Shown: positions 5,412 through 54,150 of the stretch, piece by piece
How the letters are laid out: every line of letters begins with the position of its first letter
How positions within the stretch are numbered: position 1 is the stretch's first letter
DNA from: Vitrella brassicaformis CCMP3155
Lineage: Eukaryota > Protista > Chromerida
NCBI GenBank assembly: GCA_001179505.1
Contig: CDMY01000499.1
Span: 62,001 to 126,000 of the forward strand
Length of the DNA stretch: 64,000 nt
Direction: 5' to 3'
Notes under the pieces: generated by a model
What the model saw: only the letters and a program-made list of their open reading frames with translations
Databases searched by the model: none
Told to the model about the DNA's origin: nothing
Program-made: the position numbers and the translations under genes

Positions 5412-5711
5412 NNNNNNNNNNNNNNNNNNNNNNNNNNNNNNNNNNNNNNNNNNNNNNNNNNNNNNNNNNNNNNNNNNNNNNNNNNNNNNNNNNNNNNNNN
5501 NNNNNNNNNNNNNNNNNNNNNNNNNNNNNNNNNNNNNNNNNNNNNNNNNNNNNNNNNNNNNNNNNNNNNNNNNNNNNNNNNNNNNNNNNNNNNNNNNNNN
5601 NNNNNNNNNNNNNNNNNNNNNNNNNNNNNNNNNNNNNNNNNNNNNNNNNNNNNNNNNNNNNNNNNNNNNNNNNNNNNNNNNNNNNNNNNNNNNNNNNNNN
5701 NNNNNNNNNNN
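5412..5711. other. Assembly gap (300 N) inside the LINE
   Basis: N run between ORF1 and the ORF2 C-terminus, so the true size is probably several kb. Confidence 1.
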
Positions 5712-29500: not shown

Positions 29501-31200
29501 ACTCGACTGACGACTACAAATATACGGACATTGCACGCACGCCAGCGTATCAAAGATGTATTTACTCGCACCTCTTGCAACGATCCCTAAACAAAGTCGC
29601 CCCTCTCGTACCCCCATCGAGTAAATAACCCATCGTTAGTGATGGTGGCCTGCTTGAACTTCTTGAAGACGGCAAAGTCGTCCATCCAGATGACGGCAAA
29701 GGGATGATCTGGGTTCTCTCTTTAGCTCTTGTACTCAGCGGCCGCCTGTCTGTCGTTGCCCTGGCCGTTGCAGTTCTTGTAGACACACATCATGGGCGTC
29801 GTGCGGCACAGGTTAAGCATGGCCTTCTCGCACAAAGATCCACACACACACATGTCACGTCACCCAAATCTCACCTCATCGTCTGTCATGTTGCGAGTTT
29901 GCTCCTCGCCGTAGGCAGAGTAGAAACACACCGACTGAGTGGACTCGCCATCGTCCGTCTGCACCATTGGTGACCATAGTAGGTGCACAGTCGCCGCATA
30001 CTGAGACAGCACCAGACAGCCACTGCAAGCCATCATTCCTTTGTGTCTCCTTACGTAAGTGCGTGTGTGTGTTTGACCTATGTGATAGTCGTCAAACACA
30101 CCTCGTTGGAGATGGTCTTGATGGAGATGGAGTCGCCGCCCCCTGAACACAACATTCCCCTGCCTGCCTTGCTGTCTTGCCTGCCGCATTAATTGTCTGA
30201 CCTTGCTGAGTAGGTTGGGTCTTTGTCTGGAGTGGTTGACGAGCCTGCCGGACTCCCACGTGTGGCTGTACTGCTCGCTCGTGGCGTCTCCAGGTCATGC
30301 AGTTCCTCTGGCACTTGAAGTAGCACACAGAGGGGCACCACTTTGCGTCCTCCTCTAACACACACACACACACACACACACCGCTACACACACAATACAC
30401 GCATCGCTTTTATCCCCGACNNNNNNNNNNNNNNNNNNNNNNNNNNNNNNNNNNNNNNNNNNNNNNNNNNNNNNNNNNNNNNNNNNNNNNNNNNNNNNNN
30501 NNNNNNNNNNNNNNNNNNNNNNNNNNNNNNNNNNNNNNNNNNNNNNNNNNNNNNNNNNNNNNNNNNNNNNNNNNNNNNNNNNNNNNNNNNNNNNNNNNNN
30601 NNNNNNNNNNNNNNNNNNNNNNNNNNNNNNNNNNNNNNNNNNNNNNNNNNNNNNNNNNNNNNNNNNNNNNNNNNNNNNNNNNNNNNNNNNNNNNNNNNNN
30701 NNNNNNNNNNNNNNNNNNNNCCCCCCCCCCTTCTCCCCTTGCCCACTGGCAACTTTGGCGAGCAGGGCACTGTCGTTCTGCTTGCAGTCGGGCTCCTAGC
30801 AGAACGGCACCCTGCCCTGCTTGCCCGCCATGGCGATGTCCTTGTCCAAAAACTCGCTCGTATACAGACGTGCGCACAGCTGCGCAAACAGCCACAGCCA
30901 CACACACATCCATCCATCCATCCAGCCTACATCTGATGCAGCCATACATCAACTCACCTGCTCTTTGGGTGTCACGCGGTCTTAATCGCGTACCAATCAG
31001 ATCAGAGAGCGGTTCTCGAGTAGACACCTCGACAGCGAACACCTGGATGTTTATTGCTACCCCTACCCACCCACCTTTGCCTTTGCTTTTCCGTTTCCCC
31101 GTGCCTTTGTCTTTCCTATTGCCTTCTCTTTTGGCTCACCCTTCGCCTTTGCTTCCCCCTCGAGCTGGCGGATGCGGGAGAGGACTACCTGACTACCTGA
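26560..31200 (-). pseudogene. Decayed multi-exon gene(s) with a SET8/PR-Set7-like exon
   Basis: Protein-like minus-strand exons with GT-AG borders but in-frame stops (e.g. TGA at 27748-27750 between the same-frame ORFs 27748-28053 and 27349-27720, and TAG in RVPFC*EPDCK near 30795) and frameshifts. Exon 30202-30354 reads CYFKCQRNCMTW/DATSEQYSHTWESGRLVNHSRQRPNLLSK. Confidence 0.6.
30421..30720. other. Assembly gap (300 N)
   Basis: N run immediately upstream (minus strand) of the SET8-like exon. Confidence 1.
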
Positions 31201-34877: not shown

Positions 34878-35177
34878 NNNNNNNNNNNNNNNNNNNNNNN
34901 NNNNNNNNNNNNNNNNNNNNNNNNNNNNNNNNNNNNNNNNNNNNNNNNNNNNNNNNNNNNNNNNNNNNNNNNNNNNNNNNNNNNNNNNNNNNNNNNNNNN
35001 NNNNNNNNNNNNNNNNNNNNNNNNNNNNNNNNNNNNNNNNNNNNNNNNNNNNNNNNNNNNNNNNNNNNNNNNNNNNNNNNNNNNNNNNNNNNNNNNNNNN
35101 NNNNNNNNNNNNNNNNNNNNNNNNNNNNNNNNNNNNNNNNNNNNNNNNNNNNNNNNNNNNNNNNNNNNNNNNNNNNN
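34878..35177. other. Assembly gap (300 N)
   Basis: N run with a poly-C right flank. Confidence 1.
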
Positions 35178-36834: not shown

Positions 36835-39800
36835 ATGGAGGAGGACTTGTCGGGCGACGATGAGGCCGACGTTGGGCGCATGGATCTCGTCAGCGTCAGC
36901 TGCCTCAGCTCTCAAGGCCTGCAGTGCGCATTCTTCAAGGGATCTGCCGAGTCCACCCGGACGCTCGCCGCCAGGCTCATGAGCCGCTCCATCTCTGCCA
37001 GTTTGGTGACAAGGTCGATAGAGGACGAATTCGCAGACCCCTCAGCGCCGTTCGCCATCGTTCACCCCTCGCTGAGCAAGACGATCGTCGTCAGCCTTCT
37101 GTCCATCGCTATCGATGACCCTTTCGCTGCCCGCCCTGACGTGTGGCGATTCGCCAATGGCAAACGTCTGACCCTCTCGCCGTGGCCCTCTCGAGCGGCG
37201 CAGAGCGCGGTGCTTGAGGCCTTGATCAAGGGCGGGGCTGGCGTGGATGGACATGCTCAAGAGGACAATCGCCCCATGAAGGTCGCTGTGGCATCAGCAA
37301 ACAAGGAGGCCACCAATGTAAGAGAAAAGAGGGGCGGGAGAGGGAGAGAAGCCGGCCGGCATTCATACCCGCCCTTCTCTCGTCCTGTCTCGTCTTATCT
37401 GTCTGCAGATGTTGCTCAAGCACAAGGCCCGTGTGCACGGTTTGGAGCTCATCTACCCGCCCAGCAGCGCCGAGCGGCTCCCCCAGCCGTATGCCGCGTC
37501 ACTACTCAAGATATACAGGCAGCTGCTGTTCCACGATCGCAGCCTTGCCACGGAGAGGGACGAGGCGGGATGCACCGCTCTGCACTTGCTGGGGCAGGCC
37601 AGGCTGCATGACGACATGGTGCGGTCGGCCATGCGGCAGATCGCTGAGGCGTCCAAGAACAACAAGATGATCATCTACCCAAACAACAGGAAGGCCAAGG
37701 GACGCGCGAGAGGGGCAGAGGGAGAGGGCTGGACGGTCCGCTCGGTGGCGCGCCGCTGCATTGCGGGGGTCAAGGGTTTCCTCTGGTCGGCGTTTTTCTC
37801 CTGCCTTCTCGCTTTGGCCATCCTCATTCCCATCGTGTACTGCGTCATTCGGGTGCCTTTATGCGTCGTGTGGAGCGTCGTCACCCTCCCCTTCTCGTCT
37901 GCCCGTCATCAAATCGCTGAGGATGTCGCCGAATGCGTCGGTGGCGTGTCGTTCATCGTCGGCAACACTTGGCGCGTGCTGGCCGGCCAGGGCGTCGAAG
38001 TGCCGCAGGATATCTTCGAGCATGTGAGTGGTGACACGGATGACGACGCTGGCGATTCGTGGTTCATCGACAAGTACATAGACCTCCTGGTGGAGCATGG
38101 GCTGTCCCTCATGAATGAGAACGACAGCAGAGACACACCACTGGACTTCGCGGCTCCAGCTGGGTCGCGGGCAGTGGTCGAGCACCTGTGTCGCTCCCTG
38201 ACCCAGAAGGACATCAACCGTGTGCATCCCCGTTATCGGGTGACGGCGCTCGGCGGCGCGGCCATACGGCTGCGGCAGCTCACATACGAGAGCAAGAAGC
38301 ACCCCGCCTCGCGAGAGCACATCAGCGACCTGCAGCACGTGACCCGCACGTTGCTGCAGCACGGCGCGTCTCCCTCTCTGCTGCCGGCCGGCAATGCCAT
38401 GCAGAGACAGGCACAGGGACTAGTCATGGACATACACAGAGAGATGCAGCAGGGACAGAACGGTACGCATGTATGCACCCCAGAGCACCTATCCCATCTA
38501 TCCGTCATGTCCTCAATGTGTCTCTCCTTCTCCATGAGTGCAGTTGCCAAGAGTGCGAGCGCCCAGCCGCCGTCATCTGCTGCCCCGCCTTCACCCTCAC
38601 CCTCACCCTCACCCGTACCGCCACCCGCACCCGCACCCGCACCCCCTCCCCCTCCTCAGCAGACCACCACACGCAGCGCCACGACAAAAGGCGGCCGGAA
38701 GGGAGGCGCCCAGGCCACAACCACCAGCAGCAGCAGCAGCACGGACGAGACACAAGAAGAGCGGGTCAGGCGGCTGACTGAGGAGGTGAGGGCGCTGAGG
38801 ATGCAGGAGGAGCTGCTGCGAGAGGAGGCGAGGGAGAGGGCCGTGAGGGAGAGCAAGGAGAGCAGGAGCAAGAAGGGAGGGGGCAAGAAGGGCAAGGCGG
38901 GTGGTCACGGGTCTGGGGATGGGCGCGCACCTGGGGCCTCCCATACCACTCCTACGGCTGCGGAGCCGTCCACAGCCAAGGCAGATAGGTGAGCAACGCA
39001 CTCACAAAGGGCTGGCCGGTTGTTTGCTCGTCCATGATGTCTGTGTGGCCTCTCTGCCTGCCTGCCTGTCTGTCAGTAATAGTTCGTGTGTTGACGTTGA
39101 GGGGCGTGCCGATGAGGACTCATCCCCGGCAGCTGCGACGCCCGGTGCGGATGATGGCGGCTATGGCAGTGAGGATTTCGCACCATTCGTCACCGTCACT
39201 CACACCAGCAAAAAGAAAAAGAACAAAGCCGACAAACTCGCGTAAGCCTGCGGCAGGAACGATATGCAACCTTCTTGTCTCCCTTGCATTGATGAACGCT
39301 CTTGTGTGTGTGTCTGTGTGTCTGTCTGTCTGTCTGTCTGTGTGTCTGTCTGTCTGTCTGTTATCCTCTCAGGGCAGCGAATGGTGCTTGTGCCAGTCGT
39401 GCTGCGGGCGCTGCCAAGCCACACAACCACCGGTACACAAGGAAAGGGATTGATGGGCGCCACGAAGAGCACCTTATCCATCTGTTGATGTGATGTTTCC
39501 CTTTCCAGCAGTCCGCCCCCTCTCGTCCCCACACATAAGATCGCAGGGTGAGAACACATCAGGGATACGCGGCCTTCAAAGCGGCTGCACGCACTCCATG
39601 TGTCATTGTGTGTTGTCAGATCGTTGGCTAGTTTGTCGACTGGCGACATCGGGAAGGCTCTGCCCACTGCATCGGTGTCCTCGGCCACAGCAGCAGGCGA
39701 CTGGTAGCACCGCCCACCAAAAGCTCATGGCTGCATGGCATGCATCGATGAGAGCTTTCCTGTCATTTGTTTGCAGCACGGGCGAGACGCCTCGGGGGCA

Positions 39801-40416
39801 CAGCACTAGCGGCACGGCTGCACCTTCTTCTGCCAACCCCACGGCGACCGGCATCGAATCGAGGTGCGAGACATGGCAAGGAACGGGTGGAGGGGGGTTC
39901 GCAGGATGCGACGCATTATCCACTGGACCTCCTTGTTTTGGTTGTCGTGTCCAGGTCGCCTGCTGAGGATAGTAAGGACCGTCTCGTCCACCAGCTACAG
40001 CAACAACTGGACGACGCCAGGCGAAAGTGAAATAAACAAACATGAAACACGAACCACGCATGTATGTGGTCTGTCTCTCGTTGTCTGCCAGGCTGGCCAA
40101 GGCCACTGCGGACCAGCAGCCGTCCACTGAGCGCCATCCGGACACCGACTGCATCATATGTGACGGCGACCACGGCAAGGCCACCATCATGATCATCCCC
40201 TGCAGACACATGTGCGTCTGCACCCACTGCTACACACAGTGGAAGGCCAGGCACCAGCAGGAGGTGGCCGCGGCGAGGCAGCGGCAGGCGGCCGGGTCGA
40301 CAGCAGCTCTGCCCAGGTTTGAGTGTCCGTGTTGCCGTGCCGATGTGGTGTTTGCGGGAACCAGGGAGGAGGTGCTCAAGTGGGCTAACCAGCCTTACAA
40401 ATGGCAGCTAGACTGA
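36835..40416 (+). CDS. Ankyrin-repeat protein with hydrophobic insertion, coiled coil and C-terminal C3HC4 RING (putative E3 ligase)
   Basis: The head has WPSRAAQSAVLEALIKGGAGVD, GCTALHLL, DTPLDFAA and TRTLLQHGAS. The last exon has CIICDGDHGKATIMIIPCRHMCVCTHC...FECPCCR. Confidence 0.88.
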
Positions 40417-40806: not shown

Positions 40807-43800
40807 CTACTCTTGGTGCGGGAAGAGGATGTCGGCGGCCTCGCTCGTGCCCAGCAGCAGCTCACACGACCTCTTCAGCTCGTCCACAATCGCCGCTCTG
40901 GCTCGGCTGCTCCTCGTCAGGGGCACGCACATCGCCATGAGGGAGAGGTCCGATATGTCATGAGACCGCAGCGACCGCGAGTGGTCGATCGCCTCACGCA
41001 TGGCCCTGGCGCCCTCCTCCTCCCGAAAAGTCTCGTAGAAGATGAAGAGACGCAGGGCATGCAGCCTCGATATCATGAGGGTGTCGATGTTCAGCCCCCG
41101 CACCCTCTGCAGCATCTCGTCCACCTCGCGCAGGTCGCTCGCTTTTCGCCAGCTCTTGGAGTTCAGCCGCTGCTCCACTTGCTCGATGACCGACAGGGCG
41201 TGGGGGCTGTACTGGGGCTCGGGCAGCTGATAGTGGCGTGCTATCGCCCTCTCTTCGGACGGGCTGCGATCGAGCTGGTCCCAGTAGGAGACGGTGACCT
41301 CGTTACCGCGGGCGATGGGGCGGACGGCACGAACAATCAGGAGGTCTTCAACACAATACCTGCGCGCATAAGGCAGAACATATGAGCCTGAGCCGTCTCG
41401 ACAGTATCTTCTGGTGAGCGCGCGGCTTACCAGATGGCATTGCGCTTCATGCCGGCGTGGTTCAACAGCGATGGCAAAGGCCACACACCCCCTGCAGGAC
41501 AACACCAAGGGCATACGCACATGAAAAGCCATCCACCCCATCCATCCATCCATCCATTCTTCGTGTGACATTGTATCACCTGACATGAGCATCGGAGGAA
41601 GCGAGCCCTGGATGGAGGTCTCAATGATATCGTCAGGGGTGCGGATGTTGAAGTCCAGCAATCGGCGGAGGTGGCCAGGGTCGCTGTCCATCTGTGCCAC
41701 AGGCGGACCGAACTCCTCCCCGTTGGGAGAGCCCACTACTCGCGGCAGCAGCGGAAACTCCACAGTCAGCCCGAGACACGTCTCGGGGGCGGGAGCGGCC
41801 CTTCTGATGGACTTCCTGTGGGCCATCACCGTGACGGCCGACGGCTGTCCCCTGCCGGGCGGCAGACAGCACAGCTGAGAGACCAGCCGAGGGTGCCAAA
41901 CGTCACACTGCGAGGCCAGCCGTGCCACCAGCCGCTCGTCGAATCGCCCACTGTCTTGCGACGATGCCCGCTCCACCACGACGGCCTTCTGAACGGTCAG
42001 CAGCTGCCCCACCCGGACATTTGCTGTGGCAATGAGGGCCGGCTGGCTGTCGGGGGCGGGGGGACTGAAACCGACTGGCCCGACGTACTCAGCCACGTCG
42101 ATGGGCGTGGTCCTGCCGAGCTGTCTGTTCTGGGCACTGCCCATTGCTTGTCGGTAGATGGCCGCCCAGTCATAGTTGCCGGTGGCGTTGGCCGCATGGG
42201 TGCGGATGCGCCGCTGCAGTGTGGTGATGTCTGCCGCCATCTGACCCTCCAGCTCCTGGCAGACACACACATACAGGCACACCACTTTCCCCTCTCTGTC
42301 TCACGAGTGTCCCATTGCCAGCTTACGTGATTGGTCAGCGCCTGGACGACGGCATCGGCCGCGTCGAAGAGCCGCTCCGCCAGCAGCCCCTGGCCCAGCC
42401 GAATGAGGGTCTTCTGCTGGATGACACTCAGCTGCTGGCAGGGCCCCTTTAGGCAGCTCAGATGAAATGCCGCGGTGGCACAGCCGACGGCGTCCGGCCC
42501 TCCCTCCTTGATGAGCTTCGGCTGGAGCAGACACGCAGCCGCGTTGCTCAGCAGTGCCACGAGGGNNNNNNNNNNNNNNNNNNNNNNNNNNNNNNNNNNN
42601 NNNNNNNNNNNNNNNNNNNNNNNNNNNNNNNNNNNNNNNNNNNNNNNNNNNNNNNNNNNNNNNNNNNNNNNNNNNNNNNNNNNNNNNNNNNNNNNNNNNN
42701 NNNNNNNNNNNNNNNNNNNNNNNNNNNNNNNNNNNNNNNNNNNNNNNNNNNNNNNNNNNNNNNNNNNNNNNNNNNNNNNNNNNNNNNNNNNNNNNNNNNN
42801 NNNNNNNNNNNNNNNNNNNNNNNNNNNNNNNNNNNNNNNNNNNNNNNNNNNNNNNNNNNNNNNNNTGCCACGAGGGTCGACACGTCAGCGGCCGCCAAAC
42901 CAGCGGTGAAGACGTCACGCGCATCGGCAAATCTCTCGCCGTCCTGCAGCTGCTCTCCCTCCGTCAACGCATCCGTCACTTGCTGCGGTGCGTCGACGAC
43001 CGGCTGGTCTGTCGAGCACAGCTGCGTCATGGCGTCCGTCATGAGTGCCGCGATCGCTCCTTTCGATGGCAGATCGACGTCTTGGTCATCATCGTTGTAA
43101 GCTGCACCGGTGAGCTGCGCGATGAGGGGCTTGTAGACAATCTCAGCAGTGTGCTGGAGGATGGCATACTTGGTGCCTGGCTCGATGGAGTGTGGGGGCG
43201 GGAGGATGCGGAGGGCGGTGGTGACGTCGATGAAGGCAGCGAGGTAGCTGTCGAGCACAATCAGGCACTGGGAGCGGCGAATGAGCAGCTCAGCAATGGT
43301 CTCACGCTCCATGCGGATGCCCTGACACCATAAAGAGAGACAACAGCAGGAAGCCGTGTACATCGACGGCTCAGACGTGACAGTTATTGTGTGTGTGGGC
43401 CACCTTGAGATACGAGCGGTAGGCGTCGAGATACTTGTCGGCCTTGAACAGAGCATTGCCAGCGCTCTTCCATCTCTCGGCAGTGGACGGCACAGACGCA
43501 GAGGCAGATGAGCTCGCAGCAGCAGAGGCCGGAGGAGCAGCACTCCTGCGAAGAGAAAAGCAGCCACAGACAGCGATATAAGACGTCAGAATGATGGTGG
43601 CGCTGTGCATCACGTCGATCGAGTGTGTCTGGCACACGTGTCGGCATTTGACGAAGAGGGCTGCTGAGGACCTTTATCGAGCTGAGCTGACGACGGACTG
43701 CATACACCACAGACAGAGCACGTTATACGACGTTCGTTCATGAGCCCCCACCGTCGTCTTCCTCACCTGGCGGATGCAGCATTGGACGACCGTCTCTCTG

Positions 43801-45039
43801 AGCGCATCTCTCGCTGCGCGTCAATCACGAGGCTCCGGAGGAAGCGCTGATGAGGGCCGGCTGTGGGCATCTGGTCGATGGAAGCGCCATGCTCTAGCAG
43901 CACGCGGACGACGCGCCTCTGCCGTCTGATGGCTTCTTCCGGCGCCCCATCACTAAGCTGCTTACTGAGCAGGGTCCCAGCTGCCATCAGCAGAGACCGC
44001 CCGTTGGCCTGCGTCGATCCCAGACGCTCACACAGCCACTCCACCACTACCGGCGTGGCATTTAATGCCGCGCACTGAAGTGGCGTCATACCGTCCTCGT
44101 TGACCGCATTGAGGTCAGCACCGAAGTCGACCACCAGCTTCAGATATCGGCGCACAAATCTAGCCGACAGCATCGTTGCGGCCTCGTCACTCAGGGCCAT
44201 GCTGTGCAGAACAGTCCCATGACCCTGAAGCTGCTCGCCATGCCTCCCGGTGCGGTAGGACAGGATCCGCTCTGTCGCCAGTGTCCGGTCGTGTGTGAGC
44301 ATGCGGTGGTAGACATCGAGCAGGGCGTCCTCGTACTCGCGACTCGGCTCGTCTGGGAAGGCGCCTGGGAGCACCAGCGCACCAACGCCTCTATGCGCAC
44401 CATGGCGGATCAGCACCTCAGCTGCTGCCACATTGGCATATGCAGTGGCGACTCTGATGGGCCGGACGGGGGGCGTAACACGGATGTGGTCCAATGTCTC
44501 GTTCACATCTGCTCCAGCTTCGATGAGGGCCTCGAGCACGGCTGCTTGGAGCTCGCGAGAGGGCCACCGAGGGAGGTGAAGCGTGTGCACAGCAGACTGG
44601 AGTTCGCCTCGGCGGCTGCCGAATCGCCAAAAAGGCACAGCGCTGTTGGTTGGGTCGTCAATGGCGTAGAAGAGCACCGGCACCGCCGAGAGTGGTCCCG
44701 CACCAATCACCCTCAGCGCGACTCCCACTGTGGCATCAGCCTCATCGTCACCTTCACCGCCACCTCCACACAGACGAGTGACATCACCAGCCGAATTGAA
44801 GGTCCGACACATGACTCCACACACGAGTTGTCGGCTGCGAGTGAGGCCTCGGCTGTCACACTCCAGCGCCATGACGGCGAGCCCCTGCGGCTCCAGCAGC
44901 TCCCTCAAACCGCTCTCGCATGGAAGCTCCTCCCCCCACTGCGCAGGCGCAGACGAAAAACACACACACGTAAGGTGGGATGCAATCACTCGCGCACATT
45001 TTCCAGCTGTTTCCTTTCGCTCCGCACCTGACTAGCCAT
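40807..45039 (-). CDS. Ankyrin-TPR-SET domain protein, copy A (SMYD-like methyltransferase fold)
   Basis: The 12-nt first exon MASQ (45039-45028) is followed by the ANK exon 44938 to about 43770 and a linker exon. Then come TPR segments (AERWKSAGNALFKADKYLDAYRSYLK; LLSNAAACLL) and SET motifs GVWPLPSLLNHAGMKRNAIW and LLIVRAVRPIARGNEVTVSYWD. All junctions checked between the ANK and TPR parts are in frame. Confidence 0.85.
42566..42865. other. Assembly gap (300 N), probably spurious
   Basis: Both flanks share the 11-mer TGCCACGAGGG. Confidence 1.
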
Positions 45040-45221
45040 CAGTTCTGACGTGCGTCAAGAACCTCGCCAAACACTGTAGCCAGAAACAACGAGTCGCGTA
45101 TCAAAGCAACGGAGGCCTTTTCCGCTGTCACCTGCTAGACGACGGCGATAAGACTGCTAGCGGGCGTGAAGAGGCAGCCGCCACCCGACGTCCTCCAGAT
45201 AAGTCAGACGTCGACAACAAC

Positions 45222-45352
45222 TGCACACCAGAGAGACAAAGACAGAGAGTTCTTCCGCAGGTATCGCCTTTTCTCCTTGGTGTTGCCTTCGGTGCAGTGG
45301 CTGACCTGTGTAAGCCGTCCTAGAAGCCCTCGAGGTCACGGCTTCGCCTCAG
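45222..45352 (-). promoter_or_regulatory. Putative 5' UTR exon/intron of gene A, homologous to that of gene C
   Basis: ACACAG|GTCAGCCA donor near 45305 and TGTGCAG acceptor near 45222. The 29 bp at 45283-45311 match 54260-54288 at 26 of 29 positions. Confidence 0.55.
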
Positions 45353-46206
45353 ATCTACCACAAATTCGGCGTCAGAGTTGGTTCTACGACAATCACAGAT
45401 CAAAGATACCTTCACTGCCAACGAGCAACCTGGTAGCGAAAGCGCCGAGGCTGAGCCGTTCGACGAACGCGAGCTTTTCTGCCGATCGGAATGCCGACAA
45501 AACCGCGTGCATGAGACTAGGGATGGGCCTGCGGTTCGCATTCGCTGCACCACGACGTGACGGCGTTGAAAAATGAGGAATAGATCTATCAGCTGACGAC
45601 GGAACAACGCAGTGGTGCATGCCCGCTGTGACTTTCATAGTAGGTTTCTGTCTTGGTTCATGGGTGCGTCAGTGATCGCACCTTCTTTTCCATGCTGGTG
45701 TTCCCATCCAATCTCTGGCAGGGGGAAGGCATTCTTCGATTCGATTCGTATGCAACGTCCGCACACCACAACGAGTCACACGTCCATCCACTCGCACAAA
45801 CACAGAGGGAGAGAGCAAAAGAGAGAAAAGGCAGTCGATATTCTCTCTGCTGGCAACAAACAGGAGAGAGTGGAAGGGGCAGAAGTCGCCTCACTCAGCC
45901 AGTCGTCCACCCCATCGTCTGTGTCTGTCTACGTCCATCTGCCCACTACAGCGAACGTCTCGCACGATGTCGGCAAATCCTACAGGGAAACAAACGTACA
46001 CACACACATGAAAGCCGACGTGTGTGTGGTCTGCACAGACGTGGGATGTCTGTCTGCCTGACTGCGTCTTCAAGTGGAGCGAAGAGAAGACAGGCATCTC
46101 ATGTGTGTGGATGGATGGATGTGGAGGCCCATCGATACAAAAAATGGCGAGAGAGAGAGAGAGAGAGAGACAGCCATCCACCCAGCCATCCGGGTGTCAT
46201 CGGCAC

Positions 46207-47360: not shown

Positions 47361-50300
47361 TCATCTACTCGACGACAAGCGCGGGCAGAGGATGTGGAAC
47401 GCCTCGGCCGTCCCGAAGATGACCTCACAGGACTTTTTGATTTCGGTCAGCGCCTCCTCCCGGTCGCTGGCCGAAATCAAAAGGTCCTGTGGAGAGGAGA
47501 GTACTACTGCCAGCTGGCCGATGTCATGGATATCGTAGGATAGCAGTGCACGAGAGGTGGCGACCGACTCGCGAGTCGCCGCCACCGCCTCCGTCACTCG
47601 CCCCGCCGCGAACAGACAGGGCGACCGATATGCCAGCAGCTTCGCGACCAAGATGGTGCGGACATTCAGGCGGCGCACTTGCTGCAGCATCTCGTCCACC
47701 TCACGCAAGGTCTCCTCTCCTGGGTCGGGCTTCTCCTGCATCATCTGCAGCCGCTTCTCCACCTGCTCGATGACCTTCACCGTAAGTGGGCTGTAGGGGT
47801 TGGGCGAATCGGGAAGGTCGAAGCGCCTCGCCAGCAACCTCTCGGCAGCCAGGGTGGTGAAGAGTGGGTCCCAGTAGGAGACGGTGACCTCGTTGCCGCG
47901 GGCGATCGGCCGGACAGCACGGACGACAATCAAATCCCCCTCCTCGAGGATATACCTGCGCGCATCAGGCAGCACAAATGAGCCTGAGCCGTCTCGACAG
48001 TGCCATTCGCGTGGGCCTGGGGCTTACCAGATGGCATTGCGGCTCAGTCCGCCGTGGCTCAATAGCGATGCCAACGGCCACACACCCCCTGCATAGCAAA
48101 GTCATTTCAAACACAGTCCTCTGTCGGCAGCTCTCATTGTTTGTTTCTCACTTGACGCTTTCAGACAGGCGACACCCATGCCTCGCAGGGAATTCTCGGC
48201 GCCGATGTCATAAGCAATGTGGGTCTTGAAGTCCAGTAATCGGCGGAGGTGGTCAGGGGCGCTGTCGATCTGTGTCACGGGAGGACCGAACTCCTCCCCG
48301 GTGGCCGACCATATGAACCGCGGCACCAGGGGAAAGTAGGCTGGAGGCAGCTCTAGACATGTCTCGGGGGCTGGAGGCCCCCCTATGGCGGACGGCTGTC
48401 CCCTGCTGGGCGGCAGACAGCACAGCTGAGAGACCAGCCGAGGGTGCCAAACGTCACACTGCGAGGCCAGCCGTGCCACCAGCCGCTCGTCGAATCGCCC
48501 ACTGTCTTGCGACGATGCCCGCTCCACCACGACGGGCCTCTGGACAATAAGGAGCTGCCCCGGCTGGACATCCTGTGTGGCGACGACGCTCGGCTGGCTG
48601 TCGGGGGCGGGGGGACTGAAACCGACTGGCCCGACGTACTCGCCAACGTCGATGAGCGTGGTCCTGCCGAGCTGTCTGTTCTGCGCACTGCCCATTGCTT
48701 GTCGGTAGATGGCCGCCCAGTCATAGTCGCCCCGAGCGTTGGCCGCGTGGGTGCGGATGCGCCGCTGCAGCGTGGTGACATCTGCCGCCATCTGACCCTC
48801 CAGACCCTGACGGACACACACACAGGGGTCATCTGACTCCCCTTTCTGTCTCATGAGTGTCCCATTGCCAGCTTACGTGATTGGTCAGCGCCTGGACGAC
48901 GGCATCGGCAGCGTCGAACAGCCGCTCCGCCAGCAGCCCCTGGCCCAGCCGAATCAGCGTCTTCTGCTGGATGGCACTCAGCTGCTGGCAGGGCCCCTTT
49001 AGGCAGCTCAGATGAAATGCGGCGGCCGCACAGCCGACGGCGTCCGGCCCTCCCTCCTTGACGAGCTTCGGCTGGAGCAGACACGCAGCCGCATTGCTCA
49101 GCAGTGCCACCAGGGTCGACACGTCAGCGGCCGCCAGACCAGCGGTGAAGACGCCACGCGCATCGGCGTAGCTCTCGACACCCTGCAGCGCCGCGCCCTC
49201 CGTGAGCGCATCCGTCACTTGCTGCGGTGCCTGGACGACCGGCCGATCTGTCGAGCAGAGCTGCACCATGGCGTCCGTCATGAGTGCCGCGATCGCTCCT
49301 TTCGATGGCAGATCGACGTCCTGGTCATCATCGTTGTAAGCTGCACCGGTGAGCTGCGCGATGAGGGGCTTGTAGACAATCATGGCGATCTCCTGGAGGA
49401 TGGCATACTTGGTGCCTGGCTCGATGGAGTGTGGGGGCAGGAGGATGCGCAGGGCGGCCGTGACGTCGATGAAGGCACTGAGGTAGCTCTCCAGCCCGAT
49501 GAGGCACTGGGAGCGGCGAATGAGCAGCTCAGCGAGGTACTCACGCTCCGCTCGGATGCCCTGACACCACACAGACATCACAGCAGGAAGCCGTGTGCAT
49601 CGACGGGGCAGATGTGACAGTTATTGTGTGCGTGGGCCACCTTGAGATACGAGCGGTAAGCGTCGAGATACTTGTCGGCCAAAAACAGAGCATTGCCAGT
49701 GCTCTTCCATCTCTCGGCAGTGGACGGCACAGACGCAGAGGCACTCGCAGCAGGTGCTGCAGCAGCAGCACTCCTGCAAACAGGAGAGCAGCCACAGACA
49801 GTGATATACGACGTCAGAATGATGGTGGCGCTGTCCATCGTCTCAATCGAGTGTGTACGGCTCACGTGTCGGCACTTGACGAAGAGGGCTGACGGGCGTC
49901 CTCGTCGATCGGAGCACCTGACCGGCTGCACACACCACGGCCATAGAGAGCAACCAGTGAGGCATTCGTCAGCCGCCAGTATGGATCTTGTCTACTTACC
50001 TTGTGGATGGAGCAGTGGAGGGCACTGACGGCCCACTCGGGTCAGAGCCACCCGCACCCTTCGCCGCAGACTGCTGCATCCCTTGCTGGATCTCCAGCAC
50101 TAGGTTGCGCGCGTATTGCCAGCTGGAGTTGTCATTGGGCAGGAGGCCGATGTCCGCACCATATCGCAACAGCGTGCGGATGATCTGCCTCTGCCGGTCG
50201 ATCTTCTCGGGTGGGGTTCCCTCTTCGCTGAGCTGCTCCGCGAGGCGATGCGCCGCCGCACCCAGTGCCGTCCTCACCAGAGCCTCAGCACTGTTGTCCT

Positions 50301-51512
50301 CGCTGTTGATCTCGTCGGGCCCGAGCCGCTGACACAGCCACTCGACCACTGGGGGGCCACCAAAGTACGCAGCCATTCTGAGGGGCGAGTTCCCATCATC
50401 GGTTCTGGCATCGAGGGAGGCACCATTGGCCGCCAGCAAGTCGAGATAGCCGCGCATGAAGGCTGCCGACAAGCCGGGCGGGGCCTGAGAGGCACGGTGC
50501 ATGGCCGTGAACCCAGAGAAGCGGCCGCTCGCCAGTGTCGGTTCGTACTCGAACAGCCGACGATAGACTTCGAGCAGGGCTGTCTCGTATGCAGGCGTGG
50601 GATGTGACGGCGCTGCATTTCTGGGGACGAAGCTAATCGCCAGGGCCGAGGATATTCTTCTCGCCCCATCCGACGTCTTGACCAGCGGGGCACCATCCCC
50701 TTCATCCCGCACAGCCGCCCCACTCTCGAGCAGCACCTCGGTCGCCGTGACGTTGGCCATCATGTGGGCCACATTGAGGGGACGGAGGTATGGCGCGCCC
50801 TCATTCACGTCAGCACCGCACTTGACGAGCGCCTCCAGGACATCACGCTGCACTCGGCGAGAGGGCCAGGTGGGGAGCTTGAGGTGCTGGGTCACAGCCG
50901 ACCAGAGGGCAGGATGGCTGTCGAACTCGTCGTCCACTGCGAGCCACAGCACACTCACACGGGCTGGCCGGAGGAGCTGGATCAGTTGCTTCCCTTCACC
51001 GTTCAGAACCGTCACTGGCTGCCTGCTGAATCTGATAGCTGTCTGGGCATCAGCCCCTCTCTCACGACACAGCCGCCATACCTCGCCACCTGTGAGGGTG
51101 CGGCACATGGTCCGACACAGCAGCTCTCGAGATCCATCGGTACTGGTGGCCGTGGGTGCCTCGCAATAGATGTCGAACCTCGCCAGAGAGAAACCTTGCT
51201 GCCCCAACAGACTCTCCACTTGCTCCAAATGAGAAGCGCCGACCCCATTCTGAGCCGCCTGATTATATGGACAGTGAATCGATCCCACATACACACTGAG
51301 TCTCATTCTTCGCAGATCGCGTACCCCCTTGCTGCCTCGTCGCTTCAGGTTTGTCGAGGCCCCAGCAGCGTCAGACGGACGTGTATCCCCGACTTGCGCA
51401 CTGACAATAAGCGAAAACAATAAGGCAATTCCCCCGTTGTTTGTGATTGTGGCGTGTGATTGTGGCGCGTGGCTTACAGAAAGGGCCCGGCAGATGATGA
51501 TGAGGATGCCAT
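47361..51512 (-). CDS. Ankyrin-TPR-SET domain protein, copy B
   Basis: First exon MASSSSSAGPF(L) (51512-51478, GTAAGC donor), ANK exon 51400 to about 50001, then TPR/SET exons closely matching copy A. SET motifs GVWPLASLLSHGGLSRNAIW and DLIVVRAVRPIARGNEVTVSYWD. Confidence 0.85.
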
Positions 51513-51516
51513 GGTG

Positions 51517-54150
51517 TCAACCAGAAGACTGAGAGTCAACAGGACACCATGGCCATGGCATTGCTGCCTCCCCGCGACTGTCTTCCACTGCGCACCTGTG
51601 TGCCCTGGTCGGTGACTCGGACGTCTCTCCATCCATCGCCTGAGACGGCATCCACATGCCGGCAGACTGCCTGTGCCGTCGGCTGCCTCGCCGACCCCCT
51701 GTGATGCCCTCATCTGCCAGCCGCCCAACGCCCCCTGCTGCCTCCGTCTCTTGTGGCTGGTTGCTACTGGTGGTGGTGGTGGTGGTGTTGATGGGCGTGT
51801 TCTTGCCCAGTGGACCATCGTGTGCTGAGGGCGGGAGGGGGGGCGGGGCGGCCGATGAGGATGATGAGGTGCTCGCGCACGCCGCAGCGCCAGACTGGCC
51901 AGAACAGACAGAAAGGCACACAAAGGAAGGATATGCAGCCGCTGCACAGCACGTGTCTATCGGTTCACCTGGCTGCTATGAGTGTCTGGGAGTGCGAGAA
52001 GACCGCCGCCCGCCGATGTGGACCGATTGGAGGCATCCTGAAGCAGACGGGCCCGAGTTTCGGCGGCCTCTTTGATGATGAGCCGCTGGTGCTCCGACAG
52101 GCCGCCCAGCAGGATGGCAAACATGCTGATGCACGCCTCGGTCACCTCCTCGAAGCCCACTGCCCCAGCCCACACGACGGGCAGGTCAGCCGAGCCGAAT
52201 GCACCGTGAGGTTCCAGGCTAAGACCCACACGCTCGCTACCGGCGGAACCGCAGGTAGCCTGAGATGCCGCCCTCAGCTGCCGCAATGCGAAGCGCTCCT
52301 CGGGTTGGCGGGGACGAATAAGATCTGAGAGCTGTGTGTCAGTCTTGATGAGTGCCAGAGTGACGGTCAGTGCGGTGGTGAGAGGGACGGGGCGGTGGGG
52401 TTGGGGTGGTGCGTGGGGTAAAGCTACGCCGCGAGCAGCTCGCTCGTTGGCCACAGAATCTGTCACACACAGAGAAGAAAGACAGATGTACACGTGTGGA
52501 CGTGCTGCCCTTCCCTTGCCCGCCTGCATGGCCGCCTGTTTGCATACCTGCGATTTGCCGCAAGAAGGCCTGCATCCTCTTGCCGGGGTCTATGGGGTCT
52601 GTCGGACGAACAAGCTCCGCCCACACAGGTGAGGCCACCAGGCCATCCACCACGGCCCGCCCAGCTGACAGTGCCGTCTGCAGTGCCGTGTCTGTCGCGG
52701 CAGCCGCCCACTGAGTGTGGTGCAGGCCGGTGATCTCGAAGACAAAGCCGATCGTGTCCATCGAACCACCAGGAAAGGACGCTTTCTTGACCACACTGAC
52801 GTTGGTCGACTCGACCTTCTTGCTCTCCTTCTTGGCCATTGTCTTGGCTGTCTGTGCCGCCTGCTTGACTTCTGCCGAGAGCTGCTGCTGCTGCTGCTGC
52901 TGTGGGGCGGAGGGGGGAGGGCACTCGATGATGGACGGAAGGCAGCGGGGCGAGGGGGATGAGGAGGGAGGCCGTTGGGACATCTCTCGCTGTATGTCCG
53001 ACACCAAGCTGCGTGCTTGCTGGGTCTCCAGCACTAGGTTGTGAGTGCGCATGTGGTCAGGGGACGCACCATGCTGAAGCAGCAGGCGGACGACCTGCTT
53101 CAGTCTGTCGATCTCGTCCGGGCGCTTCTCGTTCAGCATATAACTAAGGTGCACGCCCGCGAGTTCAATTGGCAAGAGATCCTGCCCATTTCTCTTGTTG
53201 ATCTCCTCCCTCACAAGCCGCTCGCACAGCCACTCCACCGCACTCGGTGCACCCGCCATGACGGCGAAATCAAGGGGCGTGACGCTTTTTGCACCCTTGG
53301 CGGTGAGGGAGGCGCCGTGTTGGGCCAGCAGGTCTAGGTACGAGCGCATGAACTCCGACGGCAGTGACCGCGACGCCGCCATGTGCATGGGGGTGGCCCC
53401 GCTGTCCTTGAGCTGCTCAGTCGCCAGTGTCCGGTCGTGGTCGAACAGCCGGCGATAGACGTCGAGGAGGGAGCTGTAATACTGTGGGCCGGGGGATGGG
53501 GGAAGGGCACTTCGAGGCGGGAGGTAGCCCAGCTGCAGGCCGCGCACAGCCGCCTTAGCCTTGAGCAGCACCTCCACAGCCGTCGGGTTGGCGCAATCGC
53601 GTGCCCACGCGAGGGGTGCCAGGTTGCCGCGGTTCACGTCTGCCCCATTGGCGATGAGCGCCTCGAGCACCTTCCGCTGTGTCTCACGAGATGGCCAGGG
53701 AAAGAGGCGGAGCTCCTTGTCGTTCACATTCAAGACACATACAGGGCTGTCGACCCCGTCAATGGCGATGGTGAGCAAGCCGTAGGGCTCCACTTGATCG
53801 CCCTCTTTGGCCACGCTAATGTTCATGTCAGCATCAGCTCCTTTCTCATGGCAAAGCCTTGCGATTTGGGAGTCTGGCTCGGGTGCGCGGCACATGATGA
53901 CGGACGCCAGCCGGCGGTTCGCGGGGCTGTTGCGCTCACTGCCATCCCTGCCGCTGATCGTGGTGAGAGAGAAGACCTGCAGACTGAGCGGGGCATCAAG
54001 TTGCCGCTCGTACGATCGCCCCTCGTCAGTCTGAATGGACAAAGCAAACAGACGAGGAAGAGATCTCCCCTTTTCCTTTTCCTCCTTCCCACTGACCTGG
54101 CTGGACGGCGGCATGCGATCTGCCGACGAATGAGAGGCGGCAGCCGCCAT
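51517..54150 (-). CDS. Ankyrin-repeat protein with unrecognised C-terminal domain (gene C)
   Basis: ORF 52339-54150 has the family ANK head (WPSRETQRKVLEALIANGADVN, GATPMHMAA, VTPLDFAV). It splices in frame (ATCGCAG|GTATGC) to DSVANERAARG...VTEACISMFAILLGG and a low-complexity last exon ending at TGA 51519-51517. Confidence 0.8.

What the first reader, a model, noticed from the sequence alone, without database searches (positions are those of the whole stretch)
40807..45039. ANK-TPR-SET fusion whose SET domain has lost all zinc ligands
Seen: in-frame splicing (...AASA(S)|PSSAQ...ADT|SAAPP) links the ANK exon to the TPR and SET exons, which the ORF track shows as separate. The SET signature reads LLNHAGMKRN instead of NHSCxPN. 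After VTVSYWD the sequence runs ...ARHYQLPEP with no CxC...C post-SET motif. Established: in SMYD/SUV39-type SETs, the Cys of NHSC and three post-SET Cys bind one Zn that shapes the active site, while SET7/9 and SET8 work without it. Inference: losing both sets of ligands together points to a distinct Zn-free SET subfamily with an ANK targeting arm, possibly acting on non-histone substrates. I do not know of a named ANK-TPR-SET architecture in this order.
Basis: partly seen in the sequence, partly recalled or inferred. Interest (0 to 1): 0.7.

Follow-up and report, generated by a model that had tools for sequence, protein, structure and literature searches.

The report
Zinc-less SMYD-like ANK-TPR-SET gene
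This is a real, expressed 1127-residue gene of the alga Vitrella brassicaformis that joins an ankyrin head and TPR repeats to a SMYD-like SET methyltransferase fold; the SET fold has lost its zinc-binding cysteines and belongs to a family of about 13 copies seen only in this species, and whether it still methylates anything is open.

Summary
A spliced transcript contig (L001) matches the minus strand from 45455 to 40526 in 11 blocks, with GT-AG at all 10 introns. It links the ANK exon, a linker micro-exon, the TPR exons and the three SET exons in one mRNA. The N gap (42566-42865) is false. An 11-mer is duplicated on both sides, the cDNA crosses it with locus-specific bases, and at least 9 paralogs are contiguous there, so the frame is kept. 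The genome encodes 1127 aa. The public model CEM18268.1 (1114 aa, "uncharacterized") already fuses the domains but drops 13 aa at the gap.

The C-terminal half is a SMYD-type SET plus a helical CTD (Z about 18 to SMYD2/3, 17 to Toxoplasma AKMT). It has no MYND finger. All four ligands of the SMYD3 post-SET zinc site are replaced, in ours and in all ten family members aligned. The nearest outgroups, TPR-SET proteins of a kind common in fungi and plants, keep GRGL, NHSCxPN and CxCxxC.

The family has about 13 loci, and sequence search found it only in Vitrella. The ANK head marks one subclade. GxG is lost in nine of ten members, the Asn of NH varies, and the catalytic Tyr is Phe in two paralogs. 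Catalytic competence is therefore doubtful.

Verdict: a new variant of a known kind, of moderate interest. The scan had already noted the ankyrin-head modularity (s1-205555, s1-242768).

The parts
45306..45455 (-). 5' UTR exon a. The transcript contig starts at 45455, so the true 5' end may lie further upstream.
   Evidence: L001 nt 1-150 match at 100%, with a GT donor.
45132..45220 (-). 5' UTR exon b.
   Evidence: L001 matches at 100%, with AG and GT borders.
45028..45073 (-). Exon with the start codon (ATG at 45039-45037, reading MASQ).
   Evidence: L001 matches at 100%. In-frame stops lie upstream of the ATG in the cDNA.
43767..44938 (-). Ankyrin-head exon of about 390 aa. Pfam ANK repeats fall at 43874-44143.
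   Evidence: Ank_4 scores 41.6 bits and Ank_2 33.1 bits, both over cut-off. L001 matches at 100% over 1175 nt. The exon belongs to a family with more than 110 matches in this genome.
43614..43697 (-). Linker micro-exon of 28 codons (S)PSSAQ...ADTCARHTRS(T). It is Ser/Pro-rich and probably disordered.
   Evidence: L001 matches at 100% with GT-AG borders. The homologous linker is present in the public models of paralogs B, D and F.
43404..43545 (-). First TPR exon, carrying the motif WKSAGNALF...YRSYLK.
   Evidence: L001 matches at 100%. The predicted structure places helices H5-35 here. The exon is conserved in 12 paralogs.
42327..43321 (-). One long TPR exon that the false gap interrupts in the assembly. 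Real sequence is 43321-42866 joined to 42554-42327.
   Evidence: The cDNA is continuous across the join. The paralogs are contiguous there. The TPR fold scores Z 14-16 to Sec72, Tom70, CHIP and Cns1.
42555..42865 (.). Assembly artefact: 300 N (42566-42865) plus a duplicated 11-mer (42555-42565, a second copy of 42866-42876). True distance is zero, nothing is missing and the frame is kept.
41580..42255 (-). Exon covering the capping helices, SET-N and the SET insertion. The degenerate motif I, PDSQPAL, is at 42034-42054 where outgroups have GRGL. DFNIR is at 41641-41655.
   Evidence: L001 matches at 99.85%. Alignments A1 and A2. Predicted strands E320-355.
41431..41491 (-). Micro-exon of 61 nt with the SAM-binding signature LLNHAGMKRNAIW. 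The NH codons are at 41457-41462.
   Evidence: L001 matches at 100%. It aligns to SMYD3 LLNHSCDPN.
40807..41359 (-). Last exon: SET-C with the catalytic-position Tyr (VTVSYWD, 41278-41298), the cysteine-free post-SET replacement ARHYQLPEP (41215-41241), the helical CTD, and the stop codon at 40807-40809. The 3' UTR runs at least to 40526.
   Evidence: The ORF is intact. L001 matches at 100% except for a 120-nt stretch that comes from paralog E. The CTD aligns with the SMYD TPR-like CTD.

Best explanation
Shown:
- Window 45455-40526 (minus strand) is one expressed gene of 11 exons in Vitrella brassicaformis. It encodes 1127 aa.
- The domain order is an ankyrin-repeat head, a Ser/Pro linker, a TPR region of about 250 aa whose nearest solved folds are Hsp70/Hsp90 co-chaperone TPRs, then a SMYD-like module.
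- The SMYD-like module is a split SET domain and a helical TPR-like CTD. It has no MYND finger and no post-SET zinc site.
- The gene belongs to a family of about 13 loci found only in Vitrella by sequence search. The family descends from the widespread MYND-less TPR-SET lineage, whose other sampled members keep GRGL, NHSCxPN and CxCxxC.
- All ten family members aligned lack the four zinc ligands, so the loss most simply dates to the base of the family.
- The ANK head, itself from a family with more than 110 matches in the genome, marks one subclade.

Inferred:
- The conserved [Y/W/F/H]-x-[L/I/V]-Pro turn takes over the structural role of the zinc knuckle.
- Motif I is eroded, the Asn of NH drifts freely among paralogs, two paralogs have Tyr replaced by Phe, and a basic residue probably sits at the lysine-channel Phe position.
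- From this I judge it somewhat more likely (about 55%) that this protein no longer works as a canonical SAM-dependent lysine methyltransferase. On that reading it uses the SET-CTD cleft, the TPRs and the ANK head as a multivalent protein-binding scaffold, or has a re-purposed active site.
For: - Transcript and exon structure.
- Public full-length model P0050.
- Gap closure.
- SMYD-like fold: PDB profile hits SMYD3 at E 5e-18 (A1) and 7e-5 (Vitrella-only A2), and AKMT at 1.7e-4. Foldseek gives probability 1.0 to SMYD3 and SMYD2 for our own TPR+SET model. VIA gives Z 18.3 over about 300 residues for the paralog D SET+CTD model.
- Closest structural clusters are TPR+SET proteins of fungi and plants, TM 0.73-0.76.
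- Zinc ligands: SMYD3 uses Cys208, Cys261, Cys263 and Cys266 (PMC3105404). The aligned positions here are non-Cys in all ten family members.
- Family restricted to Vitrella: 12 hits at E<1e-3 in 1.84 billion representatives (names).
- Tree: the family is monophyletic at 100/100 and the ANK clade has 100/99 support.
- Motif erosion. The SMYD3 mutants Y239F and F183A are inactive.
- Still under selection: dN/dS is 0.14-0.54 with no stops.
Against: - This copy does keep Asn-His, the catalytic-position Tyr, the Tyr257-equivalent aromatic and the Asn181-equivalent.
- His, RNAxW and the SET core are invariant across paralogs.
- In SMYD3 the contacts from the GxG strand to the cofactor are main-chain contacts, so side-chain loss there need not abolish SAM binding.
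- Zinc-free SET enzymes exist (SET7/9, SET8, LSMT, SETD3, SETD6).
- The Phe183-to-Arg mapping rests on motif position and predicted secondary structure. HMMER placed that segment differently.
- Both AF2 models have pLDDT below 50 in the SET insertion.
- No biochemical data exist.
Confidence: 0.55

Rival explanations
1. This is an active, zinc-independent SMYD-like protein lysine methyltransferase. A proline-rich turn replaces the zinc knuckle. The ANK head and the TPRs recruit non-histone substrates, and paralogs with different heads methylate different targets.
For: - NH, the catalytic Tyr, the aromatic at the Tyr257 position and Asn at the Asn181 position are all present in this copy.
- The predicted SET+CTD superposes on SMYD2 and SMYD3 over the whole length.
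- Purifying selection acts on the gene.
- The basal paralog P0008 keeps GRG and NH and passes the Pfam SET cut-off at 34.2 bits while also lacking the cysteines. A zinc-less but otherwise canonical state therefore existed.
- SMYD3 GxG contacts are main-chain contacts.
Against: - The Asn of NH is S, S, S, A, Q, R, R, R in eight of ten family members. In the tree our Asn sits inside a clade of Ser-bearing copies, so it may be a chance single-base reversion.
- Tyr is Phe in two paralogs.
- Phe259 is replaced by Leu, and Phe183 probably by Arg or His. The SMYD3 mutant F183A is inactive and F259A is substantially impaired.
- Pfam SET scores only 16.9 bits on this protein.
Confidence: 0.35
2. This copy is a decaying or redundant member of a recent gene-family expansion. 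It is transcribed but on its way to becoming a pseudogene.
For: - The family contains broken members. Paralog E has a 7-nt duplication that shifts the frame in the last exon, and paralog G has an in-frame TGA.
- dN/dS reaches 0.54.
Against: - The 1127-codon ORF is intact across 8 coding exons with correct GT-AG splicing.
- dN/dS is below 1 in every exon.
- The transcript was recovered with both UTRs.
Confidence: 0.06
3. There are two genes, an ANK gene and a TPR-SET gene, and the annotation and a chimeric transcript assembly merged them wrongly.
For: - L001 is demonstrably chimeric with paralogs in two short stretches, cDNA 2217-2286 and about 3241-3360.
- The neighbouring public model P0001 fuses what may be two genes.
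Against: - The ANK exon, the micro-exon and TPR exons 1 and 2 are 100%, 100%, 100% and 99.8% identical to this locus, with exact GT-AG junctions. ANK paralogs are only about 35-45% identical, so cross-assembly there is implausible.
- The same ANK-linker-TPR order, with 350-600 nt spacing, recurs in paralogs B, C, D and F and in their independent models.
- No stop or start signal separates the parts.
Confidence: 0.03

Closest known systems
SMYD family lysine methyltransferases (SMYD3, SMYD2, SMYD1; PDB 3mek, 3tg4, 3n71)
   Same: - Split SET domain followed by a helical TPR-like C-terminal domain that closes over the substrate cleft.
- Best sequence-profile hits in the PDB.
- Best structural hits in the PDB, Z about 18.
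- The NH motif, the catalytic-position Tyr and the Tyr257-equivalent are present in this copy.
   Different: - No MYND zinc finger inside the SET domain.
- All four post-SET zinc ligands (Cys208, 261, 263, 266 in SMYD3) are replaced.
- GxG is replaced by SQP.
- A long N-terminal extension of ANK plus TPR is added.
MYND-less TPR-SET proteins of fungi, plants and uncultured eukaryotes (ESM Atlas clusters with PF00856 plus TPR_1/TPR_2, e.g. 'putative methyltransferase FGSG_00040'; P0011, P0012, Elasticomyces P0046/P0047)
   Same: - Same order: TPR, a conserved G-x-YDW helix, SET, then CTD.
- The only non-Vitrella SET-domain sequence hits.
- Best structural cluster matches, TM 0.73-0.76 over about 375 residues.
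   Different: - The sequenced outgroups aligned here (P0011, P0012 and relatives, P0046/P0047) keep GRGL, NHSCxPN and the CxCxxC post-SET, and none of those models shows an ankyrin head. The ESM Atlas clusters were compared by Pfam content only.
- The Vitrella proteins have extra N-terminal TPRs and a helical insertion.
Toxoplasma gondii apical complex lysine methyltransferase AKMT (PDB 6fnd)
   Same: - SMYD-like SET plus CTD without MYND, from a related lineage. The apicomplexan-chromerid kinship is from my own knowledge.
- Z 17.1, rmsd 4.4 over 288 residues.
- Profile E-value 1.7e-4.
   Different: - The Vitrella family is not its orthologue. It is closer in sequence to the TPR-SET group.
- It carries N-terminal TPR and ANK arms.
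- I did not check the zinc ligands of AKMT.
SMYD4 (TPR + SET/MYND + CTD)
   Same: N-terminal TPR repeats stand in front of a SMYD-type SET-CTD (rows 7-8).
   Different: SMYD4 has MYND and, by my own knowledge, the Cys-rich post-SET. It has no ANK.
G9a/GLP (EHMT2/EHMT1), the known ANK + SET methyltransferases
   Same: Ankyrin repeats lie N-terminal to a SET domain in one polypeptide (my own knowledge, not tested here).
   Different: Those are SUV39-type SETs with zinc-rich pre-SET and post-SET and no TPR or CTD. The SET here is SMYD-type, so the ANK-SET combination arose independently.

Membership tests
SET domain (Pfam PF00856) | Score over the Pfam gathering cut-off (22.4 bits) | tested here: not met
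   The full-length public product P0050 scores 16.9 bits, and the exons alone reach E 0.17 at best. Paralog P0008 scores 34.2 bits and outgroups P0011 and P0012 score 23.3 and 37.1 bits, all over the cut-off.
SET domain (Pfam PF00856) | SET fold as judged by predicted structure against solved SET enzymes | tested here: met
   Our own TPR+SET model (pLDDT 73.8) gives Foldseek probability 1.00 to SMYD3 and SMYD2, E 2e-4. The paralog D SET+CTD model (pLDDT 76.2) gives E 1e-9 and VIA Z 18.3 with about 300 residues aligned.
SET domain (Pfam PF00856) | SAM-binding and catalytic signature: GxG, NH, and Tyr of ELxF/YDY | tested here: inconclusive
   NH (41457-41462) and Tyr (in VTVSYWD) are present. 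GxG is replaced by SQP. Among paralogs Asn varies in 8 of 10 and Tyr is Phe in 2 of 10.
SMYD subfamily | MYND zinc finger inserted in the SET domain | tested here: not met
   No zf-MYND hit appears in P0050 or any paralog. The insertion has no C6HC pattern.
SMYD subfamily | Cys-rich post-SET zinc site (SMYD3 Cys208, Cys261, Cys263, Cys266; PMC3105404) | tested here: not met
   The aligned positions read NHAG and HYQLPEPQY. No Cys is present in any of the ten family members.
SMYD subfamily | Helical TPR-like C-terminal domain packed against SET | tested here: met
   In the paralog D model, seven helices from H287 to H413 have pLDDT 84-97 and align to SMYD2 and SMYD3 through chain residue 429/417. 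Our last exon is 82% identical to that paralog.
MYND-less TPR-SET family (fungi, plants, protists) | Architecture TPR, then SET, then CTD, with sequence and structure similarity | tested here: met
   phmmer gives E 2.7e-6 and 4.6e-4 to P0011 and P0012. The shared motifs TG.YDW and DVAEYVGP appear in alignment A1. TM is 0.73-0.76 to TPR+SET clusters.
MYND-less TPR-SET family (fungi, plants, protists) | Canonical GRGL, NHSCxPN and CxCxxC motifs, as kept by all outgroup members sampled | tested here: not met
   Alignment A1.
Hsp70/Hsp90-binding carboxylate-clamp TPR domains | Three-TPR fold similar to Hop, CHIP, Sec72 or Tom70 | tested here: inconclusive
   Z is 13-16 with 120-130 residues aligned and 21-26% identity. 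The tool's own note puts helical repeats at about 13-14 by chance. The Vitrella-only profile hits Cns1 at E 1.4e-3.
Hsp70/Hsp90-binding carboxylate-clamp TPR domains | Five clamp residues (Lys, Asn, Asn, Lys, Arg) | tested here: inconclusive
   By motif position, WKSAGN (Lys, Asn), LLSNAA (Asn) and QQKTLIR (Lys, Arg) are conserved in the family. They lie in different TPR triplets, separated by an insertion. No residue-level superposition was available.
Ankyrin repeat proteins | Pfam ANK models over cut-off | tested here: met
   Ank_4 scores 41.6 bits, Ank_3 34.5, Ank 32.9 and Ank_2 33.1 on the exon.
G9a/GLP-type ANK-SET methyltransferases | SUV39-type SET with pre-SET and post-SET zinc clusters | tested here: not met
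   The best PDB matches are SMYD, AKMT, SETD6 and SETD3, not SUV39-type, and no Cys clusters are present.

The most novel reading that the evidence does not exclude
The Vitrella family is a zinc-independent offshoot of the SMYD-like methyltransferases whose active site has been re-tooled. A Pro turn stands in place of the zinc knuckle and a conserved Arg or His in place of the lysine-channel Phe. On this reading it modifies something other than a lysine, or a lysine in an acidic context, and it is aimed at different clients by swappable heads (ANK in one clade, other helical arms in others). That would make it a natural experiment in modular retargeting of a SET enzyme.
Probability: 0.15. Interest if true: 0.65.

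Novelty: new variant of a known kind. Interest (0 to 1): 0.38.

Why it matters
In SMYD-type and SUV39-type SET enzymes the post-SET zinc site is held to shape the cofactor pocket and the lysine channel. Here a whole expressed gene family under selection has replaced all four ligands with a conserved proline turn while keeping the SMYD-like SET-CTD architecture.

If any member is active, it shows how that fold can do without zinc. If none is, the family is a clear case of a SET pseudoenzyme radiation with exchangeable targeting heads.

Practically, the work closes an assembly gap and restores 13 residues to the public protein model. It gives a family assignment to about a dozen Vitrella proteins now labelled uncharacterized or only SET domain-containing. 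It also shows that a transcriptome contig for this gene is a paralog chimera.

Tried and rejected
- Pfam run exon by exon gave nothing for TPR or SET. The SET domain is split over three exons.
- The genome-wide PF00856 scan did not list this locus.
- The look-up of encoding contigs found no record for P0001, because own-genome records are withheld.
- The ESM Atlas feature search on P0050 returned only ankyrin clusters with scores below 0.9, which is uninformative.
- Paper searches for Vitrella plus SET or ankyrin, and for AKMT plus SMYD, found nothing on this family. FGSG_00040 appears only in a gene-cluster survey.
Exons were searched by reference, and full-length analyses used the public records P0050 and P0014 by id.
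- Rejected: P0014's odd C-terminal tail as an isoform. It is a 7-nt duplication imported from paralog E by chimeric assembly.
- Rejected: comparison with SET7/9 or LSMT as the nearest class. SMYD and AKMT rank clearly above SETD3 and SETD6.
- A direct ANK-to-TPR splice that skips the micro-exon would also be in frame, but no evidence for it was seen.


Full report
**What is there.** The window is eukaryotic (GC about 57%, short GT-AG introns). Names attached to homologues identify it as Vitrella brassicaformis CCMP3155. The assembly has 72.7 Mb in 1064 contigs, and the window is C499:62001-126000.

**The gap, tested first.**
- The N run 42566-42865 is flanked on both sides by the same 11-mer, TGCCACGAGGG. 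Removing the Ns and one copy of the 11-mer gives ...DVSTLVA|LLSNAAAC... in frame.
- In paralog B inside this window, the homologous sequence is one uninterrupted ORF (48829-49581) that reads ...STLVALLSNAAACLLQ....
- In at least eight further paralogs the two flanks abut exactly.
- Transcript contig L001 (JGI 3300017148, 3945 nt) crosses the join with the 11-mer once. It is identical to this locus for 216 nt before and 77 nt after the join, including three positions where paralog B differs.
- The gap is therefore an unrecognised 11-nt contig overlap, and nothing is missing.
- The public protein model P0050 (CEM18268.1, UniProt A0A0G4FUI9, 1114 aa) treated the gap as an intron and so lacks 13 residues, VALLSNAAACLLQ.

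**Gene model.**
- L001 aligns to the window in 11 blocks with GT-AG at all ten junctions.
- The exons are 45455-45306 and 45220-45132 (UTR), 45073-45028 (ATG at 45039, with in-frame stops upstream in the cDNA), 44938-43767 (ANK), 43697-43614 (linker micro-exon), 43545-43404, 43321-42866 joined to 42554-42327 (one exon), 42255-41580, 41491-41431 and 41359-40807.
- The coding sequence adds up to 3381 nt, or 1127 aa.
Its second donor is 24 nt too early, since the cDNA reads ...ADTCARHTRST|SAAPP.
- L001 is not a clean copy. A 70-nt stretch of the long TPR exon carries 7 mismatches. About 120 nt of the last exon are identical to paralog E, including a 7-nt duplication that shifts the frame. This explains the aberrant tail of its product P0014. 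The genomic last exon is intact and the rest of the cDNA, 3' UTR included, matches it at 100%.
- I did not build or submit a joined spliced sequence. Exons were searched by reference, and whole-protein analyses used the public records P0050 and P0014 by id.

**Domains.**
- Pfam sees ankyrin repeats over cut-off. It sees SET only at 16.9 bits on the full product and no TPR, which explains the label "uncharacterized protein".
- A phmmer scan of 1.84 billion representatives, with the 482-residue open frame 42255-40810 (SET-N and last exons, read through two stop-free introns), found only 12 proteins at E<1e-3. Nine are Vitrella paralogs. One is an unrelated cysteine-repeat protein. Two are MYND-less TPR-SET proteins, P0011 and P0012, whose own relatives include Elasticomyces (fungal) proteins with SET+TPR.
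- A profile of the family hits SMYD3 at E 5e-18 with outgroups and 7e-5 with Vitrella only. It also hits Toxoplasma AKMT at 1.7e-4, and its N-terminal part hits the TPR co-chaperone Cns1.
- AlphaFold models were built for our TPR+SET (pLDDT 73.8) and for paralog D SET+CTD (pLDDT 76.2). Paralog D was used because our own complete C-terminus has no single reference.
- The TPR part of our model scores Z 14-16 to Sec72, Tom70, CHIP, Cns1 and Sti1.
- Over the whole SET+CTD, the paralog D model scores Z 18.3 to SMYD2, 18.0 to SMYD3, 17.1 to AKMT and 16.6 to SMYD1.
- The nearest ESM Atlas structure clusters are TPR+SET proteins of Mucoromycota, Ascomycota and Streptophyta (TM 0.73-0.76). SMYD and SMYD4 follow.

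**The zinc ligands.**
- HMMER aligns LLNHSCDP-N and QYCFECDCF of SMYD3 with LLNHAGMKRN and RHYQLPEPQY here.
- All ten Vitrella family members aligned lack all four cysteines. Instead they share [Y/W/F/H]-x-[L/I/V]-P.
- All outgroups keep NHSCxPN and CxCxxC.
- In a maximum-likelihood tree the Vitrella family is monophyletic at 100/100, so one loss at its base is the simplest account.

- Motif I, GRGL, survives only in the early-branching paralog P0008. Ours reads DSQPAL.
- The Asn of NH is S, S, S, A, Q, R, R, R in eight of ten members. Ours has Asn, but it is nested among Ser-bearing copies and one base change apart.
- The catalytic-position Tyr is Phe in two paralogs.
- Phe259 of SMYD3 corresponds to Leu/Val/Ile here.
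- By motif position and predicted secondary structure, the NSF strand of SMYD3 (Asn181 to Phe183) corresponds to N-I-R here, with Arg or His in the whole family.
- In SMYD3, Y239F and F183A abolish activity, while the GxG-strand contacts to the cofactor are main-chain contacts.
- The Phe183 mapping is an inference. HMMER placed that segment differently, and the region has low pLDDT.

**The family.**
- Six-frame searches find about 13 loci, four of them on this contig and one (B) in this window at 47361-51420.
- Paralogs A, B, C, D and F have an ANK exon 350-600 nt upstream on the same strand, and perhaps E does too at 2.2 kb.
- The models of A, B, D and F form one clade with 100/99 support. 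Paralog C was not in the tree.
- The other paralogs carry unrelated N-terminal arms of 290-550 residues without a Pfam match.
- The ANK exon itself belongs to a family with more than 110 matches in the genome.
- Pairwise dN/dS between A and B, C, D and F is 0.14-0.54, so the coding sequence is under moderate constraint.
- Divergence is mosaic. dS is 0.13-0.30 in the central exons but 0.9-1.4 in the ANK exon and the last exon, which points to gene conversion or recombination among paralogs.

**How it most likely works.**
- Shown: one expressed protein with an ANK head, a co-chaperone-like TPR region and a SMYD-like SET-CTD without MYND or zinc ligands.
- Inferred: the proline turn substitutes structurally for the zinc knuckle.
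- On function the evidence is split. I put about 55% on a SET fold that no longer acts as a canonical lysine methyltransferase, being either a scaffold or substrate-trap or a re-tooled site. I put about 35% on an active zinc-free enzyme, and the rest on decay or a mis-modelled gene.
- The TPR similarity to Hsp70/Hsp90-binding clamps is suggestive, given the known SMYD-Hsp90 link (titles). However, the clamp residues are only partly traceable, so I leave that as a lead.

**Novelty.** The fused gene model is public but unnamed. TPR-SET is a common architecture. The zinc-less, MYND-less, motif-eroded SMYD-like module with an ankyrin head, expanded to about 13 copies, was found only in Vitrella at the sensitivity used. 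I class it as a new variant of a known kind. The scan's earlier notes s1-205555 (ankyrin heads with interchangeable tails in this window) and s1-242768 (a multi-ANK TPR-SET gene elsewhere in the genome) agree with this picture.

**Limits.**
- The alignments behind both AF2 models are shallow (19 and 26 rows).
- There is no residue-level structural superposition and no architecture database.
- The single-sequence library scan could miss very distant ANK-TPR-SET proteins.

Noticed in passing
window 47361-51420 (-), extending to 54150: Paralog B has the same exon plan as our gene (ANK, linker, TPR, SET). The public model P0001 (1954 aa) fuses it with the upstream ANK gene at 52339-54150 through a poorly conserved middle part. 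That fusion may be an over-merge.
   Followed up: partly
window 42555-42865; public protein CEM18268.1 / A0A0G4FUI9: The deposited protein model splices over the false gap and lacks 13 residues (VALLSNAAACLLQ) of a conserved TPR helix.
   Followed up: yes
L004:2113-2319 (G000:C292, paralog E) and L001:3241-3360: Paralog E carries a 7-nt tandem duplication (GCATGCC) in its last exon that shifts the frame. Exactly this stretch is embedded in transcript contig L001. That contig is therefore a paralog chimera, and paralog E is itself transcribed.
   Followed up: yes
window 40810-44938 versus 47382-51219, L002, L005: Divergence between paralogs is mosaic. dS is 0.13-0.30 in the TPR and SET-N exons but 0.9-1.4 in the ANK exon and the last exon. 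Our last exon is closest to paralog D, while our central exons are closest to B and C. This suggests gene conversion or exon-level recombination.
   Followed up: partly
window 36874-38479 (+) and 40042-40416 (+): Another member of the ankyrin-head family lies on the plus strand. It is followed by an ORF with a RING-like Cys/His pattern (CIICDG...CRHMCVCTHC) that converges on the 3' end of our gene.
   Followed up: no
window 52951-54006 (-), 57284-58240 (+), 58418-59401 (+); genome-wide: The roughly 380-residue ankyrin head is a very large family in this genome (113 matches at E<=1e-3, with 106 of 269 candidates scored). Most copies sit in ORFs of 570-650 aa.
   Followed up: partly
window 16606-16905, 30421-30720, 34878-35177: Three of the window's four other 300-N gaps abut poly-C runs, and 5412-5711 does not. 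None of the four shows a unique-sequence overlap like the one at 42566-42865.
   Followed up: yes
L006 (G000:C499:150056-152242, paralog G): This paralog has an in-frame TGA in the SET-N exon and no ANK exon within 3.8 kb upstream. It is possibly a pseudogene.
   Followed up: no
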